A stretch of 61,435 nt of DNA, filler included, from Hausera hauseri (Eukaryota), in the NCBI GenBank assembly GCA_046269625.1. It is 9 parts of 9 records of this genome, joined end to end, with 100 filler letters (N's around TTAATTAATTAA, not from the genome) between each part and the next. Parts side by side here need not be neighbours in the genome. Positions count along the whole stretch, not along the records: positions 14,727 to 24,704 come from JBJURY010261065.1; positions 24,805 to 30,162 come from JBJURY010271952.1; 7 more parts are not named here. The stretch is one strand, 5' to 3'. Positions within the stretch are counted from its first letter, which is position 1. Each line of letters starts with the position of its first letter. A program made the translations under genes and the position numbers. Positions 22,801-32,366 of this stretch are shown here, in pieces. The notes beneath the pieces are model-generated. The model did no database searches, was not told where the DNA came from, and saw nothing but the letters and a program-made list of their open reading frames with translations.

Positions 22801-23648
22801 GACCTGTAAATACACGATTATTGTTTTCTCATTTGTTGTTATTTGTTTCCTAATCGCCGACGAATTGATACGCTTTCGTCGTTTTATCTCATCGCACCAG
22901 AATATAGATGTGTACCGTGGTCTCAATTTTATTATATATTTCTCTCTTTGCACGGCCGTCTGTGCTCAGAAAATTAACATGACGTCTTTGGCGGATTTAT
23001 TTGTAACTCTTATTTATTCGTAGAGAAAGGTTTCTGTAAAGGCATGTGTGTCACTATTATTGGCTACATTTTTATTTCGTTATTGCATATAATGAGCAAA
23101 ATGCGGACTTATTCATTTGGCTTTCCTCAATGACATTGTTGCGTATGTGAACCTTTTCTACTGTGCTTATAACACGAAAAGAAATTGTTTCATTAAAAAG
23201 TGCCATCCGCATCTTCACAAACGTTTAATAGACTGTAAAGATGACCAGAAGCAGAACATTATTCAATCTTATATTGAGAATCTTATAAATGAAAATTTTG
23301 AGATCTCTGAAACAGTCTGACTAAGCCAGTGATTGTGGGGAAATAATATATGTACCCGAAGTAAACAGTAACTTTGAAACCGGTGGAGAAAGAGACTATA
23401 AAAACTTTTGCATGATTTTCAATGCAGCAGTTTGAATACAGAAGAGGTCATTTTACCAACAACCGAAGAAAGTTGTACATTTAAAGACATTTATAATCTC
23501 AACAAAGCATTGACTACCGATGAAATATAAAGATGTTTGTAAATATTGATTTTGTGAACTTAAAAAATTATATCATATATTTGCTATTCATTTTTGCTTT
23601 TAAATGAAGGAATCAAGTAAAATTACTGATTTAACACAAAAACTACAA

Positions 23649-23665
23649 TGGTGTCAGAAGTGGGA
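23649..23665 (+). other. tRNA-Leu primer-binding site immediately after ...CA (probable 5' LTR end)
   Basis: ACA-A-TGGTGTCAGAAGTGGGA is complementary to the tRNA-Leu 3' end UCCCACUUCUGACACCA, the usual PBS of Mag-type gypsy elements. Confidence 0.8.
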
Positions 23666-25283
23666 GTTACTCCTACTTACATAGGAGTAAGTATATATAC
23701 TCCTACTAGAATACCTCCTATTAGTATATTATGTATATAATAACTAAATCGAATGCTGTATTGGATTTTTACGAGTGGATCAATTAATTTTTCCGCACCT
23801 GTAGCTTACATTTTAATGATAAATGTACGTCTAGTCAAAGTTTAATGTACGAGCCAAAATTAAATGACAAAATATTGCTTCAAAGATAACAAATTAATAA
23901 CAAGTTAGTTAAAAGCAAACTGATTTGATTGAAACCATTGCATGTGATGTCAAGTGTGCTCATTGTCTTGAATAAATAACCACGGTGAATCCGTGAAGCA
24001 TCATCATATTCACCTCATACTTTACCGCTGATTCTGATTGTTCAATAAAACGACAGGGTTCAGGTGACGCATCAAGCTGATTTTTGATATACTGGACATT
24101 GAAAGTGCTGGTTCAGAGGATAATTCATCAGACAAAGCTAAAGTCTTCCATCAATCAGGAGAGGTATACGAATGTACAAATCAGGTTTCATTGTGTCTGT
24201 GCTTACATGTATAGTGACATCAGTGGTGTTCTAGATTTACCGCTACAGCAATTGCATTTCGGTTACACTAGGAATCCAAAATTATCAGGTGCCTTATAGA
24301 TGTATTGCGATTTGATTCCCGCCCAAATTAACCAACCATTTTAATGATACACTTCCTCTATCATTTACCACATTACAAACAATAAAAACTCGTTCAATTT
24401 GTTTATTAAATTTGTCAGTATATCCCTTAATCTATAGTTCAACAAACAACATATTGAAATAAAATTGTGTGCATTTCAGCAACTAATTAAAGCATTTCGC
24501 TGAAATTAATTTTATTTCGGGAAAATTGGTACAACCTTTCATACTATAATTAAATTTACATTAAAAGTTACATATTTTACAGAAAACAGAATTCACCAAA
24601 TTTCTTAGTCTACGTGAAAAAACTCATTTTAGAAGTATATATTACATTGCCTAAAAGTTTGATTGCCGCTAAAAGAAACACTTAGATAAAACCTGTCTAC
24701 ACCANNNNNNNNNNNNNNNNNNNNNNNNNNNNNNNNNNNNNNNNNNNNTTAATTAATTAANNNNNNNNNNNNNNNNNNNNNNNNNNNNNNNNNNNNNNNN
24801 NNNNGAGAAGGTCATGACAAACATACACGCATTTTCTCTTCGACTTTGAGTAGCCTCTCGCATTTTTGTAACATTAACGTAGAACTGTCTATCCCACCCA
24901 AGCATCTAGTTGAAAAGAGTATTAAATATTAAGCGACATTTCTGGGTATTCGTAATACGCTAGCATCCAAAACTGGAAAAGTGATGCTTCTCTACGTTTC
25001 TGTTGAAGTTTTCAATCTGACTGAGGCTCTTCGTTTTACAGAAAGAGGTCAATTTTTTTGTTATTGTGAGGACACCTCCAGTCATACTCAGCGACATTTG
25101 TGAAGGTAGCACTGCTGCATGCTGTTTCGCAAGAGCTTTGTGGTGTTTTAAAACAAGTCCTCTCAAAATACACGAGCAAAATGGTGTTAAACTGCACGCC
25201 AAAAACAAGTGACTGCCGAAGGCAAACTATGCGAGGACATTAAAAACAGTTTATATGTCCTAAATAACAGAGGAATTGTTAAT

Positions 25284-25638
25284 GATTGATTGATTGATGG
25301 TCTTCCATCACCGCACGTTGGGTGAGCCCCGATAAGGGTTGTAGTCCTTAGGACTATGGAGTAGTGGCACTGAGCTTTCCTGTTGTAACGGTGATGTCTA
25401 GGAGGCTGGACCGAGGTCCTCAAGGCTTCCGTGCAATGCTTGGCCTGTTAGAAACGAACCACCTCACAACTGGGGACCATGTCCAACTTCCGCCAGTTAG
25501 CCAGCAGTTTTCCCTACCGTAGCCCGGGACGACGACAGGGACGTCTGGCAAAGGATCTTGGCCGACTATGGTTCGTCTGCCCTGGCACTGAGTATCAGGG
25601 TCGGCTATGGGTCGCCGTCCACAGAGCACCTCCGTCCC
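25284..25638 (-). mobile_element. Complete non-autonomous non-LTR retroelement (SIDE/SINE-like, probably RTE-derived) with 5' HDV-like ribozyme and (AATC)n tail
   Basis: GC-rich island; flanking direct repeats AGGAATTGTTAAT (25271-25283) and AGAAATTGTCAAT (25639-25651), 11/13 identical; AATCAATCAATC 3' tail. Confidence 0.85.
25492..25638 (-). ncRNA. HDV-like self-cleaving ribozyme with long J1/2 insertion
   Basis: Minus strand: P1 GGGACG(25638-33)/CGUCCC(25531-26); P2 GCCAG(25549-45)/CUGGC(25496-92); P3 ACG/CGU; L3 UCCCUGU; P1.1 CC/GG; P4 hairpin; J4/2 CUAA with catalytic C at 25500. Confidence 0.85.
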
Positions 25639-28285
25639 AGAAATTGTCAATAAAGCCATACACCCGGATGCAAAAAAGGACCATATTATTTATTGGGAGA
25701 AAAACAAAACCTCATTATTCATTTCAGTTTGAAATCAATTCACCGCCTCTTTGTTGCAACATCGCTATCTCTCTATACATCGCAAGGAAACAACAAAGAC
25801 CGTCTGGCAAGTATTTAAAGAAAAGTCTCATTGATTATAGCTGAATCGTAAAAATCTAAACCTATGATTTTACAATGATATTGATATCAAAATAATAATG
25901 TACCCAATGTGAGAACGGAACAAATTTAACAATAAACATAAGGCAGTAAACTACTCTTATAAGTTCTCTCAGTGATTTCCTCTATTTCTTCTCTTTTTAA
26001 TTCGTCCTTTATTGCCATCAGTGTATAAGTCAAACAAACAGTTGATTACAAATGCATTAGATGTTCTTTCATCTACCAGTTCTCCTCCGAAATTTTGAAA
26101 TAATCCGATACATTTTTCGCCCACTTCTTTAGCTTTTTCTTGAGTTACATATTTACCACATAATGGAGACGTTTGTTGCAATAAAGCAAGTGTATTATTA
26201 GTAGATATTTTTGGGATTTCTTTTCCGAAATAATGAATAAGGAAATTTCGTTCCTGCATACCGCCAATAAACAAAGGTTCGTATCTTGACAAATGGTTTG
26301 AGCATTTCAATATGGTCCACTGTTCCTCATTATCATTATCATCATAATCAACCGGTTAAGTGTACTTAATTTCCAATTAACAGTATGAATATAATGGATC
26401 AGTTCTATCGGAGTAAATGTTTGAGTAAATAACAACCTCAGCTCACATATTTCCCTCAAATCTTTTGCTAATTTATCATAATTTACGCAGTTGCATATTG
26501 ATTGATATTCATAAGGAAACTCCAAGGGTGATTTTTTTACATACTCGAATTGTTTTTGTATCAATGTATTAGTGAGTGTATAATCAGATATTATTTCCAT
26601 AACATCCGAAGCGACTTGATTTGGCGTATTGTCCATTTCTTCATCAACAGTATATGTTCCATCTTCTTCCTCATCATCGAGTGTGTCATTCAAGGAATTT
26701 GGGACTTTTATTAGTTTTTTTGCGTTTAGAGAAACGTTCGTTAGATTTGTCATCGTCGTTGCCAAAGAATTTACTCATTATCAACAACGAAAGTACCCAT
26801 AATAATAATGTTGAGGTCCATGAAGAATTAGGGTGATGAGATTTAGTCTTGACTGCTTCTGTTACAATGATCATGGAGAGAAAACATATTCCAATAAGGG
26901 ATAACGTTCCCAGTGAAAATGTGGAGTAACCCTTGATACCTGATGATTCGCGCTTTTTATCCTTTTCTTGAAGGTCTTGAATATGCATTGCTCTCGTTTC
27001 ATTAGCTATGTCGTCCATATATTTAATGCTATTTCCCGCAAATTGTAATCAATCTATCTTCATCCACTGTTCAGGAGGGAGATTACTATCTAAAGGCTGT
27101 CCCATTCTTCTGTTCCAGACTCGTTTAACCTCTTCTACCTCATTAATGAGTTCTCGACCTCCTTTGTTCATATTATGATGTTTAAAGATTTTTATTGCTC
27201 GACTAGCGGCTACATAATAGTGATGTTTTGATTTTCCTGGACTAGCTAAATCAGGAATCGTATAATATACTTCTTCGCAACTTATCTTCAAGAAAAATTT
27301 GTCCAGAGCGGTTAGTGTATTAAAATCTAATTTTAGGTACTCGCATATTAATTTTTTTATGGGTCTATACTGTTCATCCGTTATTCCGCACTTCTCGTGG
27401 TATTTACTACGGAAATCTCTTAATTCCGTTATACTGTTTATAGGTCTTTTGACTAATTGTTGTGCATGATTTATGCGTTCTGGTGTGGCTAACACAAAAT
27501 TCTCTAGCCGGTGTCGATTAGCGGCTTCTCTAGTTAACGGAAGTGGTGGTAGATTCCCCCTTTTCGTTGAGGCAATTCAAAATAATTTTGTTCAATTGGT
27601 TTAACTTCTTTACATTGCGCCTGCTTAGTAAGGTCTATTTTTCTTAGCTTCATATCGTTATACACTGGGAATTTGGGGCTCTCTTCCGGTTGATGTTTTT
27701 CAATTTCCTCTCTCAGTCGTTTAATATTTTCTTCAGCTTCTTCCAGCTTCTTACCTAAGACGATATAAATCACGGACGGCTGCATCTCGCTTGTGGTCTG
27801 CATTTCCATTAAGTCAGGATATATTGAAGTTGTTGATATAGGTCTTGATAGGTCTTGAAGCGAATTTCGTGGTAGTTTCTGTGGGACTCTTGCTATACTA
27901 TTTATCGAACAAGTGTCCATGTCGGTTATCAAAGGCAAGAGTACTTGTTTTCTTGCTTGATCATTCAGGGAGAAATTATTGGTTTCTTTATCATCAACTA
28001 TCATACGGCTGTTAAACATATAGTATGCTAATATCAACAGTAACATGACCGTACTGCTCCACGCATTTGTAGCAGTAGTCGTGCGCGTTGGTTGAGCATT
28101 TGCACATCCGAATAATATAAGCAGTATTAGCGTCAACAGGGTTATTGTAAACAATTTAAAGGGACTACCGAAAATTGTAGGTGGGGTATTAATTGCAGGT
28201 ATTTCCATTATTCGCGTTTGCGTTATTTTCCGTGCTAGTGTAGATTCCGTACTTTGTTCACTGATTTGCTATAATGTAGCATAAT

Positions 28286-29455
28286 TCAACGGGGGGGGAC
28301 AGCCTCTTCTCCTGGTGCGAACCACCATTGATCATTAGGTTGAGGCATGGTATCTTGGTAACCTTCGCAACTGAATATGATTGATCTTCCGATAACTTTC
28401 AGTTCTGCTCCCGTCAGTTTGTATAGTACATCTAAACCAATAATAAGATCAGAATACGACTCTTGTGGGTTGGCGTAACATGTAAAATCAATATACCCTA
28501 TGGTTAGATCCAATTTTCCGCATGCTTCGGGTATATAATATGTAATTCGTCTATATAATCGTAAACTTATACGAGTCAGCGGAGTAGTGGTATCAAGTTC
28601 CGCATTAACGTACTTACAGTACACCTTGACCAATATTGGTATCAACAAAGGATAATCATTATAATTCTGACGATAATGCATATTATATAATAACTCTAAC
28701 CTTTTTATCTCTTCCTCGAGCTCGTTCGCATTTTTTCCATATTTCTCCAAATCCTTCGTTTTTTCCAACGAATTTGTAGCTACGTCTATTACTATATCGT
28801 AATCTATTAGCGTATCTCTACCTATGCTACAAGGAATGTTGGAATTTTCTAGTATATGGTATAAAATCTTTGATCGCTTGTTTTTTAATTTGGTCAAGGC
28901 TGTAACTACGCCTATCACCTTTAGCTGATTGCCATTTATTAGTTTGTGGTTTATCTCACTACTTTCATTTAATTTTAGTTTTAAAATTTCTATTGTAGTC
29001 TTACTTAAGTAATTTTTTGCTGCTCCTGTATCTATTATTGCTTCAATTTTAACTTTATTTATAGTTATAGTTGTAGTTACCATATTATTTGATCCATCTT
29101 CTATAAACGCCATCATTGTATTTTTATCTTCCGATTGCATTCTGTTCCTTAGGGGATACCTACAAGGTGGTGTTCGTTTTTGTTCCGTATTCTCGTCCTC
29201 CAACTGCATTCTACTCCTTAATGGGTACTTGCAAGGTGGTGTTTGCTCCAGTTTGCGTTCTTTAGCTACTGGTCTACATCGTTGTACACTCATCCAAGAG
29301 GTTTTATTTGGATTAGACAAATTCTGCAATTCTACACTTGATTCAGTTATTTGTAATATCTTGTATGGTCCTTTGTATGGTAATTTCAATTTCGGGCTTT
29401 CGCCGTGTTTACAAGTCTCATCTAGTATATTAACCAAGTCTCCGATTTGGTACAC
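28286..29455 (-). CDS. Integrase C-terminal (GPY/F) region fused to two retropepsin-like domains
   Basis: 389-aa open frame with YKGPY, a duplicated PPCxYPLRxRMQxEDxNT, a DTGA protease and a second DTT protease-like domain. Confidence 0.7.
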   Translation of the reverse strand: MYQIGDLVNILDETCKHGESPKLKLPYKGPYKILQITESSVELQNLSNPNKTSWMSVQRCRPVAKERKLEQTPPCKYPLRSRMQLEDENTEQKRTPPCRYPLRNRMQSEDKNTMMAFIEDGSNNMVTTTITINKVKIEAIIDTGAAKNYLSKTTIEILKLKLNESSEINHKLINGNQLKVIGVVTALTKLKNKRSKILYHILENSNIPCSIGRDTLIDYDIVIDVATNSLEKTKDLEKYGKNANELEEEIKRLELLYNMHYRQNYNDYPLLIPILVKVYCKYVNAELDTTTPLTRISLRLYRRITYYIPEACGKLDLTIGYIDFTCYANPQESYSDLIIGLDVLYKLTGAELKVIGRSIIFSCEGYQDTMPQPNDQWWFAPGEEAVPPR

Positions 29456-29479
29456 ATGGGGTTTTGTCTTCTTGTCGTA

Positions 29480-30127
29480 CTAATCTTTGTAGTTTTCTTG
29501 TTGATATTTAATTTTTAATCCTGCTCTGATCCATGCTTCTTGTAATATTTCCTGTAGAACTGTTGCATAATCCAGTTCCTCCATCAGCTGTGACTGTGGT
29601 TGTTTATATTCAAGGTCAATTGACATAATATCTCCTCTGCCATACAATAAAAAGAAGGGTGATTCTCCAATTGTCGTATGAAGACTTTGTCGGTAAGCAT
29701 ATACACAAGGTTTTATGTATAGATCCCAATCAGCTGGGTGATCATATGCGTAACTGGATCTCATAATTGAAAATTGTTTATTAAAAGCTTCTACCGCGCC
29801 GCTGGCTTGTGGATGGTAGGGCGATATAAATTTATGATTAACTCCTAGTATTGCCAATACTTTTTCCATAAGTTTGGTGCAAAAATTACTTCCTCTACGC
29901 GATATCATTGTCATTTGTACTCCATATTTGAATATTATGTCGTCTACCAATCTCCTGGCCATAACATCCGTGGTTTGGTTTACCATTGGCATCGCTATTG
30001 GAAATTTTGAGTGGTAGTCAATAGCTGTAAGTACACATGTATTTCCTCTAGCGATGGTTTGTAATGGTCCAACTATATCAATGCTTATACAAACGAATGG
30101 TGATGCTAAAACTGGTACTGGTTTCAA
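29480..30127 (-). pseudogene. pol: Ty3/gypsy integrase catalytic core
   Basis: ISIDIVGPL, AIDYHSKF, ISRRGSNF (catalytic D mutated), PYHPQASGAVEAFN. Confidence 0.92.
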
Positions 30128-30339
30128 TGGTGTTTTTCTTGCTTGGAAATTTCCTCTTCTTTNNNNNNNNNNNNNNNNNNNNNNNNNNNNNNNNNNNNNN
30201 NNNNNNTTAATTAATTAANNNNNNNNNNNNNNNNNNNNNNNNNNNNNNNNNNNNNNNNNNNNCGTTTTGATACACGTTTCTTGCCGCCGGACACCTGTTT
30301 GGTAGGGTTACGTTTAACAATCGTTTTCAGAAAATTCTT

Positions 30340-31010
30340 CATTTTTATCATAATCATATCGTAGATTTTCGAATTTGTTTATAGATACATACACCATGTT
30401 TCTGATTGAAAATATCTGTTCGTACACGCATGTCATCGGGACACTGTTGTGTGAAGTCGATGAACAACTACACGAGTGGCTCGGTCGAAGCATTATGATA
30501 TTCTTCTATCAAGTAGGCTCGATTGTGAGAAAATGTTTTTGTGCAACATAATCAATGATAGTCTGATCACGGGGATGTTTGAACAACACCAAATAGTGTA
30601 CGTATAGATTTTGTTCGATGCTGTCCACCCTGATGGAACATGTTTTGCTTAAATAAAATACCCGTTACGCCACGGTGTCGTGCAATCTTCGTGAACAGGT
30701 TGTTGAAGTCCAATTGTCTCGCGGCTTCCTGAGATAAATCGCCAATGACAATAACGTCACCGTTGCGTAATCTCTAGGACCAGTTATCATCAAACCCATC
30801 AATTATTGTTATCAATTTCAGTTCACAAAATTCCCTATGTGTCTAGTCGGACTCACGATCATCACCAACACCCTGATGCCAGTATGTGTGATTGTACCAC
30901 AGTGAATGGAACATGCCACAGCAGTTCTGCAACTGTTTACACGCAAAGTGTGTTTTGCCACTTCTACTGGGGCTTACAATCTGGAAAATGGCGTCATTCT
31001 GCAGCTTCAT
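30340..31010 (-). pseudogene. A32/FtsK-HerA family DNA-packaging ATPase
   Basis: FQIVSPSRSGKT (Walker A), VIVIGDL (Walker B, D>G), LFTKIARHRGVT, QNMFHQG, FKHPRDQ. Confidence 0.85.
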
Positions 31011-31107
31011 CTAATAATAATAATACACATTTTCCTCGCCACATGATTTGTTTATAATCGTGTTACACGCACATATAAATAGCTATAGTACAAATACTGT
31101 TTCCATA

Positions 31108-31520
31108 ATGTTAGCTAATATCAACTATCGCGGACATGTTACCGATTGTGGCATTAAGACACTAACTTTTAATCAGTGGAAGACGAGGCAGTACGTACTC
31201 AAGTGTCCACCGGATTTTACATGCATCGTATTTCAATCAAGAAAGTGTTGCATTATGGGTTGTCGCAAACCAATCACAACTGATAAACTACTATCATTCG
31301 GAATTGTCATTGACAAAATCCAATCTGTACAAATTAGCAATGGTCACTGCTGAATGTACGTAAGAACCCGAACGGTTTCATGCACTGAGACTGACATCGT
31401 TTCGCCCACCATGTGTCAATGTGTTTAACAATGGAAAAATTGTTGTACTCCGTATTCGGACAGTGGACTATGAACCAATCATTAATCAAATTAAAAGCCA
31501 CATAAATGTTTTAGTGAATC
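31108..31520 (+). pseudogene. TATA-binding protein (TBP)-like gene
   Basis: Repeat 1 MLANINYRG...TCIVFQSRKCCIMGC; repeat 2 (other frame) NLYKLAMVTAECT*EPERFHALRLTSFRPPCVNVFNNGKIVVL, compared with TBP YEPELFPGLIYR...LIFVSGKVVLTG. Confidence 0.75.
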
Positions 31521-32366
31521 AAAATAATGTACATTGCACAGCAACAAACTACAAATACCATTTCCATGCTCATTCAGATATTACTGCCATGGAAGTCGAA
31601 GACGATAAAACGATTCTGCTCAATGATGATGATGGTTGTGCGAATGATGAAAGTTCATATTGGTCAAAAAAAAATCTAATGTCAAACTGCTGGAACCTGT
31701 CCAACAATTAGAAAAACCGGGCTATTGTCTGCGTATTGATTGTCTGCAAACGAAACAGGAACTTGCTCAGAAAGCAGCAGCAGCAGCAAAACAGACGTTA
31801 AAAAGGCAAAATGCAATGATTGAAATACGTAAACGAAAATCAAAACCGTCGGCACGCCAAACAGAGATATTTTTACCCCAACGAATTTTTTGCAAGCATG
31901 AAATGCATTTTCTGCAAACTGATTTTGCATTTTCTGCCCGTACTGATTTCATTGAATGATCCCGTGTATCTATGCGCACTCAAGTACAGGTAGCGAAGTA
32001 ATACGGCTTTTGTGTGAAAATTTGGATAAACTTTTTGGTGCTCTACATCAATTAAACGTGGATGTAAAGTTGAACGAAACGACCGCGCAACAGCAATATG
32101 TCGATTTACCAGCGAAGAAAACGAAACGGTTTGATTTCATCGCTCACGAAATGTTTCATGTACCCGATGATGATGGTTTAGAGTATCGACTGAATATCGA
32201 ATTGCAAGGATACAAGGAAAAAGCCGGTATCAAAAGTACGATTTGGCGTGTAGCTGAAGAACAATTTAATTATCAATAAATTTTATTTTACCGATCTTCT
32301 TTCGTCAACCCAATTAACGAGTATAAATGTACGTAAAATTTTAATACTGGCATAGGAATAAAAATA

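What the first reader, a model, noticed from the sequence alone, without database searches (positions are those of the whole stretch)
25271..25651. Complete 355-bp retroelement beginning exactly at the cleavage site of an HDV-like ribozyme
Seen: on the minus strand all HDV pseudoknot pairings can be built. P1 is GGGACG/CGUCCC, P2 GCCAG/CUGGC, P3 ACG/CGU. L3 UCCCUGU has the U.G pair and CC for P1.1 with GG, followed by P4 and J4/2 CUAA. J1/2 carries an ~80-nt insert. The first ribozyme G (25638) abuts one copy of a 13-bp direct repeat, and the other copy follows an (AATC)3 tail. Known: HDV-like ribozymes define the 5' ends of R2/RTE-type LINEs and of their short internally deleted derivatives. 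Inference: this is a non-coding, ribozyme-headed SINE/SIDE family mobilised by an RTE-like LINE, invisible to ORF annotation.
Basis: partly seen in the sequence, partly recalled or inferred. Interest (0 to 1): 0.85.

Follow-up and report, generated by a model that had tools for sequence, protein, structure and literature searches.

The report
Ribozyme-headed short retroelement, high-copy family
A 355-base non-coding mobile element sits here whose very first base is the predicted cut site of an HDV-type self-cleaving RNA; at least several hundred other copies in the same genome start at that same base, so it is a convincing new example of an already known trick by which promoter-less retroelements free themselves from host transcripts.

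Summary
On the minus strand, 25638->25284 is a GC-rich (56%) insert in unique AT-rich DNA. It ends in an (ATCA)4/(AATC)3 tail and is flanked by a 13-bp duplication that is 11/13 identical, not perfect. Every helix of an HDV-like nested double pseudoknot can be drawn from nt 1, with L3 UCCCUGU, P1.1 CC/GG and J4/2 CUAA (C at 25500). My descriptor hit once in the piece and never in 40 Mb of composition-matched random sequence.

Independent support comes from the only public run holding this locus. The 5' part of the element is laid at about 10^4 times the flank depth, and 338 contigs break off into unrelated sequence exactly at 25638, the predicted G1.

Caveats:
- No other copy could be fetched, so covariation is untested.
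- Rfam models do not recognise the motif.
- The cleavage-site pair is G-C, not G.U.
- An alternative fold is a few kcal/mol better.
- The last ~65 nt plus tail are 50-100 times rarer than the 5' module.
- The RTE-type partner is unsupported.

Verdict: a non-autonomous non-LTR retroelement headed by an HDV-like ribozyme, SIDE-like rather than a pol III SINE. It is a new member of a known kind.

The parts
25639..25651 (-). Upstream copy of the target-site duplication (ATTGACAATTTCT). U at -1 (25639) directly precedes the predicted cleavage site.
   Evidence: 11/13 identical to 25283-25271; P about 2e-5 for this register
25633..25638 (-). P1 5' strand GGGACG. G1 = 25638 is the first base of the element and the predicted cleavage site (5' of it).
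   Evidence: pairs with 25531-25526; 338 contigs of run X1 have unrelated loose ends beginning right behind 25638.
25553..25632 (-). J1/2 insert, 80 nt. It folds on its own (-26 kcal/mol). It holds a second GGACGG (25620-25615) that could act as a 5-bp alternative P1.
   Evidence: Long J1/2 loops (216-498 nt) occur in active silkmoth R2 ribozymes (PMC3774820).
25545..25552 (-). P2 5' strand UUUGCCAG (core GCCAG 25549-25545)
   Evidence: 8 bp with 25496-25489, duplex -9.5 kcal/mol
25532..25544 (-). P3 (ACG / CGU) enclosing L3 UCCCUGU (25541-25535). L3 has the U...G reverse-wobble positions and the CC of P1.1.
   Evidence: The role of the L3 G and U follows PMC3774820 and PMC1874588.
25524..25531 (-). 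P1 3' strand CGUCCC (25531-25526), followed by GG (25525-25524) that pairs with the L3 CC to form P1.1
25501..25522 (-). P4 hairpin, 7 bp with a 2-nt bulge and a GGAAAA loop
25497..25500 (-). J4/2 CUAA. C25500 is the predicted catalytic cytosine (equivalent of HDV C75/C76).
   Evidence: The equivalence rests on established knowledge of the HDV fold.
25489..25496 (-). P2 3' strand CUGGCGGA, the 3' end of the ribozyme (element nt 150)
25299..25488 (-). Non-coding body of the element. It includes a perfect 6-bp hairpin TAGTCC-TAA-GGACTA (25356-25342), near which the depth of related contigs falls about 50-100 fold.
   Evidence: depth 756 at 25349 against a bin mean of 31622. No Rfam family, no tRNA.
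25283..25298 (-).
   Evidence: TRF, 4.0 copies, 100% matches
25271..25283 (-). Downstream copy of the target-site duplication (ATTAACAATTCCT). Base 25283 is shared with the tail.

Best explanation
This is one insertion of a non-autonomous, non-coding non-LTR retroelement whose 5' 150 nt encode an HDV-like self-cleaving ribozyme with an 80-nt J1/2 insert.

Proposed mechanism:
1. Inferred: the element has no promoter of its own and is transcribed as part of a longer host or neighbouring-repeat transcript.
2. Inferred from the fold: the ribozyme folds and cuts 5' of G1 (25638), removing all upstream sequence.
3. Inferred: the released RNA, ending in an (AUCA)n repeat, is copied into new sites by the reverse transcriptase and endonuclease of an autonomous LINE, by target-primed reverse transcription.

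Shown here:
- The insert with tail and a ~13-bp target duplication.
- A multi-copy family whose copies share the exact 5' end at G1.
- A complete HDV-type motif anchored on that base.
- No pol III-type head and no coding capacity.

The 5' ribozyme module is far more abundant than this copy's 3' ~65 nt and tail. This copy therefore probably belongs to a minor subfamily, or is an internally deleted or recombined derivative (SIDE-like), of a larger family that shares the ribozyme head.
For: - Fold: every helix and the conserved single-stranded residues are present. There is one match in the piece and 0 in 40 Mb of matched random sequence. Given the P1 3' strand, P1 can start only at element nt 1.
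- Independent boundary: in run X1 the flanks have depth 2.6-4.9 and the element bins 23000-31600. 338 contigs run on into unrelated AT-rich letters (agreement 0.4) exactly behind 25638. A 316-nt contig matches the unique left flank (24844-25159) without any difference, so the run is probably of the same species.
- Insertion hallmarks: 56% GC against 38% in the flanks, a simple-repeat tail, and a TSD of 11/13 found only in the exact register.
- No tRNA, 5S, 7SL or other Rfam family. No protein relatives of the longest frame.
- Literature: HDV-like ribozymes define the 5' ends of R2, R4/Dong, baggins and L1Tc (PMC3774820) and are reported for RTE elements (PMC6765202). They occur in ORF-less derivatives: SIDEs (PMC3414825) and NARTc (PMC3383444). 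J1/2 loops of hundreds of nt are compatible with activity (PMC3774820).
Against: - No second copy could be retrieved, so there is no covariation test.
- Rfam's HDV-type models give no hit even at E<=10 on short sub-ranges.
- The cleavage-site pair is G1-C113 rather than the G.U wobble that the viral ribozymes need for full activity (PMC1874588). The active L1Tc ribozyme does cleave at a C1 within a G-C-rich P1 (PMC3185411).
- The nested part of the ribozyme fold plus P2 comes to about -50 kcal/mol, against -56 for a competing non-ribozyme fold. Overall folding energy is not better than shuffles, z -0.4.
- P3 is only 3 bp, P1 only 6 bp, and P4 is weak.
- The 3' ~65 nt and tail are 50-100 times less represented than the 5' part, which is unexplained.
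Confidence: 0.8

Rival explanations
1. The element is a retroelement, but the HDV-like motif in this family is catalytically dead or was never a ribozyme. The common 5' end would then reflect a transcription start (an internal promoter) and not self-cleavage.
For: A G1-C pair replaces the G.U wobble (PMC1874588). There is no Rfam hit. A competing fold is about 6 kcal/mol more stable. No covariation data exist. The TSD has two mismatches, so this copy is not young.
Against: The full motif is expected less than once per 40 Mb by chance, yet its P1 begins on the very base where 338 independent copies begin. The conserved L3 U/CC/G, the GG of P1.1 and the C in J4/2 are all intact. No promoter-type RNA gene head was found.
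Confidence: 0.12
2. The abundant repeat is the 5' UTR of an autonomous LINE. Under this reading the window copy is a one-off internally deleted or 3'-recombined insertion, not a member of an amplifying short family.
For: Depth falls 50-100 fold between the 5' module and the last ~65 nt plus tail. Several contigs join 25427-25451 directly to 25539-25547 or replace inner segments, which shows structural variants (tables 5 and 5c).
Against: LINE copies are usually 5'-truncated, so a LINE's 5' end should be rarer than its 3' end, not commoner. The residual depth of ~370-750 over the 3' part is still about 100 times the flank depth, so this 3' module is itself multi-copy. The TSD shows the 355-nt RNA was inserted as a unit. 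This rival differs from the best explanation only in which unit amplifies.
Confidence: 0.2
3. It is a classical pol III SINE (tRNA-, 5S- or 7SL-derived), or a fragment of another transposon class, and the ribozyme-like pairings are coincidental.
For: Weak A-box-like (TGGCGGAAGTTGG, 25495-25483) and B-box-like (GGTTCGTTTC, 25460-25451) strings lie 35 nt apart, downstream of the ribozyme (read; similarity judged from memory of the consensus).
Against: ARAGORN finds no tRNA. Rfam finds no tRNA, 5S, 7SL or snRNA hit at E<=10 on small sub-ranges. The box-like strings lie 140-190 nt inside the element, not at its head. Coincidence of the full HDV motif with the family's first base is very unlikely.
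Confidence: 0.03

Closest known systems
R2 SIDEs and R2/R1 hybrid SIDEs of Drosophila (Eickbush & Eickbush 2012, PMC3414825)
   Same: Both are short ORF-less elements made of a 5' HDV-like ribozyme joined to a LINE-type 3' end. Both depend on co-transcription plus self-cleavage for their 5' end and on a LINE's machinery in trans.
   Different: SIDEs are rare and sit in rDNA at the R2 or R1 site. This element is dispersed in unique AT-rich DNA, its 5' module is very abundant, its tail is a tetranucleotide repeat, and its parent LINE is unknown.
HDV-like ribozymes at the 5' termini of R4/Dong, baggins and L1Tc (PMC3774820, PMC3185411) and those reported for RTE elements (Ruminski et al. 2011, as summarised in PMC6765202)
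   Same: [quoted passage not shown] The elements lack promoters and are read through from introns or upstream LTR elements. Here an LTR-type repeat block lies upstream on the same strand.
   Different: The primary paper (PMC3308841) was not available to me, so I could not compare sequences.
NARTc / L1Tc Pr77-L1TcRz of Trypanosoma cruzi (PMC3383444, PMC4035085)
   Same: A non-autonomous element shares the ribozyme-bearing 5' end of a LINE and is dispersed at high copy. The active ribozyme lacks a G1.U wobble, since cleavage is at C1.
   Different: L1TcRz is compact (77 nt) and doubles as an internal promoter. The tails are poly(A), and the host is a trypanosomatid with polycistronic transcription.
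R2 ribozymes with long J1/2 loops (silkmoths, PMC3774820)
   Same: A large insertion between P1 and P2 (80 nt here; 216-498 nt there) is compatible with the fold.
   Different: In those R2 elements part of P1 is 28S rRNA sequence and cleavage lies upstream of the junction. Here P1 is wholly within the element.

Membership tests
HDV-like self-cleaving ribozyme | Nested double pseudoknot with strands in the order P1-(J1/2)-P2-P3-L3-P3'-P1'-P1.1-P4-J4/2-P2' | tested here: met
   all helices complementary, with a unique solution in the piece; 0 matches in 40 Mb of random sequence.
HDV-like self-cleaving ribozyme | Cytosine in J4/2 (general acid, C75/C76 equivalent) | tested here: met
   J4/2 = CUAA, with C at window 25500
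HDV-like self-cleaving ribozyme | 7-nt L3 with U (position 1) and G (position 6) for the reverse wobble, and CC pairing with GG 3' of P1 (P1.1) | tested here: met
   L3 UCCCUGU, GG at nt 114-115. The importance of the L3 G is described in PMC3774820.
HDV-like self-cleaving ribozyme | G1.U wobble closing P1 at the cleavage site | tested here: not met
   G1 pairs with C113. The wobble is required for full activity of the viral ribozymes (PMC1874588) but is absent from the active L1Tc ribozyme, which cleaves at C1 (PMC3185411). It is therefore typical rather than strictly defining.
HDV-like self-cleaving ribozyme | Match to curated covariance models | tested here: not met
   No HDV-type Rfam family at E<=10. 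This is expected if the 80-nt J1/2 insert and the pseudoknots defeat the models, but it gives no support.
HDV-like self-cleaving ribozyme | Covariation that preserves the helices among homologues | not testable with these tools
   No other copy could be fetched (look-up of encoding contigs closed; read laying cap reached).
HDV-like self-cleaving ribozyme | Mg2+-dependent site-specific self-cleavage leaving a 5'-OH on nt 1 | not testable with these tools
   Needs a bench assay.
Non-autonomous non-LTR retroelement (SINE/SIDE) | Dispersed multi-copy family with different flanks and a common 5' end | tested here: met
   depth >20000 against 3-5 in the flanks. 338 contigs diverge exactly at 25638 into unrelated sequence.
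Non-autonomous non-LTR retroelement (SINE/SIDE) | 3' A-rich or simple-repeat tail and a target-site duplication | tested here: met
   (ATCA)4; TSD 11/13, P about 2e-5
Non-autonomous non-LTR retroelement (SINE/SIDE) | No coding capacity | tested here: met
   Longest open frame is 72 codons, with no protein relatives.
Non-autonomous non-LTR retroelement (SINE/SIDE) | 5' and/or 3' end shared with an autonomous LINE that supplies RT/EN | not testable with these tools
   No LINE is present in the piece and none could be retrieved. The RTE assignment is untested.
Classical SINE (pol III head) | Head derived from tRNA, 5S or 7SL RNA with an internal pol III promoter | tested here: not met
   ARAGORN found none. 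Rfam found none at E<=10.

The most novel reading that the evidence does not exclude
The HDV-like ribozyme here may be the shared 'head' of a very abundant, modular superfamily of short retroelements in this genome (summed contig depth about 10^4 times the flanks). In that superfamily one ribozyme module would be combined with different bodies or 3' tails and so serve several LINE partners. A self-cleaving RNA would then take the place of the pol III promoter as the SINE head on a genome-wide scale.
Probability: 0.3. Interest if true: 0.6.

Novelty: new member of a known kind. Interest (0 to 1): 0.45.

Why it matters
Ribozyme-headed non-autonomous retroelements are documented mainly for rDNA-specific SIDEs and trypanosomatid NARTc. 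A dispersed family of at least several hundred copies in an AT-rich, repeat-rich genome would show that co-transcription plus self-cleavage can sustain SINE-like amplification without a pol III promoter.

It would also give an abundant natural set of ribozyme variants for covariation and activity studies, including a G1-C cleavage-site pair and an 80-nt J1/2 insert. Such elements are invisible to ORF- and tRNA-based annotation and to Rfam models, so they are probably under-counted.

Tried and rejected
- Rfam scans of the whole piece and of three sub-ranges found no ribozyme, tRNA, 5S or 7SL. ARAGORN found nothing.
- Plain MFE folding is not informative. Pseudoknots are not modelled, and z is -0.4 and -0.7.
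- Fetching other copies failed:
  - Two exact-pattern scans of metagenome contigs, on the ribozyme core and on the 3' hairpin, gave 0 hits.
  - A 20-mer scan of prokaryotic genome contigs and of viral contigs gave four loci. All share only the 20-21 nt, so they are chance hits.
  - A protein-word search with the longest in-element frame and with the neighbouring integrase gave nothing.
  - Only one public run held the locus, and the single read-laying run is spent.
- A text search of papers for the core sequence gave 0 hits.
- Ruminski et al. 2011 (PMC3308841) and Chen et al. 2009 (PMC2645270) are not held.
- The Atlas search with the integrase gave only generic rve clusters and no lineage.
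- A chance GC island is rejected, because the depth is ~10^4 times that of the flanks and the boundary is sharp.
- A pol III SINE is rejected, because there is no such head.
- The idea that the ribozyme belongs to the upstream LTR-type repeat is rejected, because about 240 nt of single-copy DNA separate them.
Full report
**What is in the sequence**

Read on the minus strand, window 25638->25284 is a 355-nt stretch of 56% G+C, set in flanks of 38% G+C. It ends in a perfect tetranucleotide repeat.

The 13 bases before the first G (25651-25639) and the 13 bases after the tail (25283-25271) agree at 11 of 13 positions, and the two differences are transitions. With the flank composition, that many matches in one register has P of about 2e-5. 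No other register within +-10 gives more than 6/13.

So the 'direct repeat' is real but imperfect, as expected for a target-site duplication of an insertion that is not young.

**The ribozyme motif**

I number the element from G1 = 25638, so nt n is window 25639-n.
- P1: nt 1-6 with nt 108-113, six Watson-Crick pairs.
- P2: nt 90-94 with nt 143-147, extendable to 8 bp (nt 87-94 with nt 143-150) with two G.U pairs.
- P3: nt 95-97 with nt 105-107.
- L3: UCCCUGU.
- P1.1: C99 C100 with G114 G115.
- P4: nt 117-125 with nt 132-138, 7 bp with a 2-nt bulge.
- J4/2: CUAA, with the candidate catalytic C at nt 139 = window 25500.
- J1/2: 80 nt.

I wrote a descriptor with these features:
- P1 of 6 bp, P2 of 5 bp and P3 of 3 bp, each allowing at most one G.U.
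- L3 = UCCNNGN.
- GG directly after P1'.
- CNAA directly before P2'.

It finds exactly one match on the two strands of the 5.4-kb piece, and the only possible P1 start is element nt 1. In 40 Mb of first-order Markov sequence with the element's own composition there were 790 P3/L3/GG cores, 79 with a P1 partner, and no full match.

**Independent evidence for the boundary**

Only one public run (X1) holds this locus. One of its contigs matches the unique left flank (24844-25159) over 316 nt without a difference, so it is probably the same species.

Laid at 80% likeness, the flanks have summed contig depth 3.9-4.9 on the left and 2.6 on the right (25700-25878). The two bins covering the element's 5' 300 nt reach 31622 and 23371. 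The strongest loose-end signal of the whole piece is at 25638. There, 338 contigs continue behind that base into letters that agree with each other only at 0.4, meaning different AT-rich flanks.

So at least several hundred independent copies, at low sequencing depth, begin on the very nucleotide that the fold predicts as the cleavage product's 5' end. The fold was derived from the sequence alone, and the boundary comes from other copies. Their coincidence is the main argument that the ribozyme defines the element's 5' end.

**What it is not**
- ARAGORN finds no tRNA.
- Rfam at E<=10, on the piece and on three short sub-ranges, finds no tRNA, 5S, 7SL or snRNA, and also no HDV-type family.
- The longest open frame inside the element is 72 codons, and a protein search with it found nothing.

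The element thus has neither a pol III head nor coding capacity. The missing Rfam hit is no support for the ribozyme. It is what one expects from models that cannot bridge an 80-nt J1/2 insert or score pseudoknots, but that is an explanation and not evidence.

**Weak points of the ribozyme reading**
- The pair at the cleavage site is G1-C113. The viral ribozymes need the G1.U37 wobble for full activity (PMC1874588, introduction). Against that, the active L1Tc ribozyme cleaves at C1 in a P1 with three G-C pairs (PMC3185411), so the wobble is not universal among retrotransposon ribozymes.
- The ribozyme's nested helices with J1/2 folded give -40.6 kcal/mol, and P2 adds about -9.5. An alternative hairpin that sequesters L3, P3' and P1' reaches -56.1. 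Folding energy is not better than shuffles.
- A second GGACGG at nt 19-24 could form a 5-bp alternative P1.

In this copy the -1 base is U, the most favourable identity for HDV (PMC1874588). That base belongs to the target site and will vary between copies.

**An unexplained asymmetry**

Depth is ~31600 in bin 25342-25520 but only 756 at place 25349 (table 4). It is about 370 over the element's last 58 nt, back-calculated from the bin mean of 126.

The 3' ~65 nt and the tail are therefore 50-100 times less represented than the ribozyme-bearing part, though still ~100 times above the flanks. The transition lies near a perfect 6-bp hairpin (25356-25342). No sharp, well-agreed loose end was listed there. 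Several low-depth contigs join 25427-25451 to 25539-25547 or replace inner segments (tables 5 and 5c), so structural variants exist.

Two readings remain:
- The ribozyme head is shared with a much commoner family, either a parent LINE's 5' UTR or sister short elements with other 3' modules.
- The 3' ends are too variable to be laid.

I could not decide. The TSD shows that this particular 355-nt RNA was inserted as a unit.

**Context**

From 25879 to 30162 all long ORFs lie on the same (minus) strand. The block is itself highly repeated in X1. It carries an rve integrase core (29483-30127) and, further downstream, an aspartic-protease domain.

The ribozyme element lies about 240 nt of single-copy DNA downstream of this block on the same strand. 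That would allow read-through co-transcription, as described for baggins and RTE elements downstream of LTR elements (PMC6765202). This is inference only.

**Comparison with what is known**

HDV-like ribozymes are known at the 5' ends of R2, R4/Dong, baggins and L1Tc (PMC3774820, PMC3185411) and are reported for RTE elements (PMC6765202). ORF-less derivatives that keep the ribozyme are known too: R2 and R2/R1 SIDEs (PMC3414825) and NARTc (PMC3383444). J1/2 loops of 216-498 nt occur in active silkmoth R2 ribozymes (PMC3774820). A review also states that some SINEs use HDV-like ribozymes (PMC6765202).

The present element works like these and fits the definition of a SIDE-like element better than that of a classical SINE. 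Its differences are dispersed insertion into unique DNA, very high abundance of the head, a tetranucleotide tail, a G1-C cleavage-site pair, and an unknown partner.

**Verdict**
- It is a new member of a known kind.
- Confidence is 0.8 that this is a ribozyme-headed non-autonomous retroelement.
- I put the odds that this particular copy's ribozyme still cleaves efficiently at roughly even.

Noticed in passing
window 28289-30127 (minus strand): An rve integrase core (29483-30127, PF00665 E 1.4e-10) is followed downstream on the same strand by an ORF (28289-29455). That ORF starts like an integrase C-terminus and then carries an aspartic-protease domain (aa 124-224). Integrase before protease is not the usual Ty3/gypsy or Bel order, so these may be two adjacent or nested elements. 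The block is extremely abundant in run X1 (depth 18000-65000).
   Followed up: partly
window 29118-29243: A tandem duplication of 69 nt (two 57-nt copies, 77% alike) lies inside the ORF 28289-29455. It encodes a repeated TPPC(K/R)YPLR(S/N)RMQ peptide. Several X1 contigs skip 71-90 nt here, so the copy number of the unit varies among family members.
   Followed up: no
window 25972-28208 (minus strand): Five consecutive ORFs of 110-224 aa on the minus strand have no Pfam match, yet are repeated in X1 (depth 700-36000, uneven between bins). They are probably decayed parts of one or more further repeats.
   Followed up: no
window 25342-25356: A perfect 6-bp hairpin (TAGTCC-TAA-GGACTA on the minus strand) sits where the depth of related contigs drops 50-100 fold. 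Four contigs carry a 3-nt insertion in its loop (behind 25349). It may be a recognition hairpin or a module junction of the element.
   Followed up: partly
window 25660-25699: The flank just upstream of the element is held by about 5 contigs at depth 19-36, all with T instead of G at 25678. The next bin is single-copy. This is a short low-copy repeat or a duplicated locus.
   Followed up: no
window 25451-25495 (minus strand): Strings resembling pol III box A (25495-25483) and box B (25460-25451) lie 35 nt apart just 3' of the ribozyme. No tRNA-like fold or Rfam hit supports them.
   Followed up: partly
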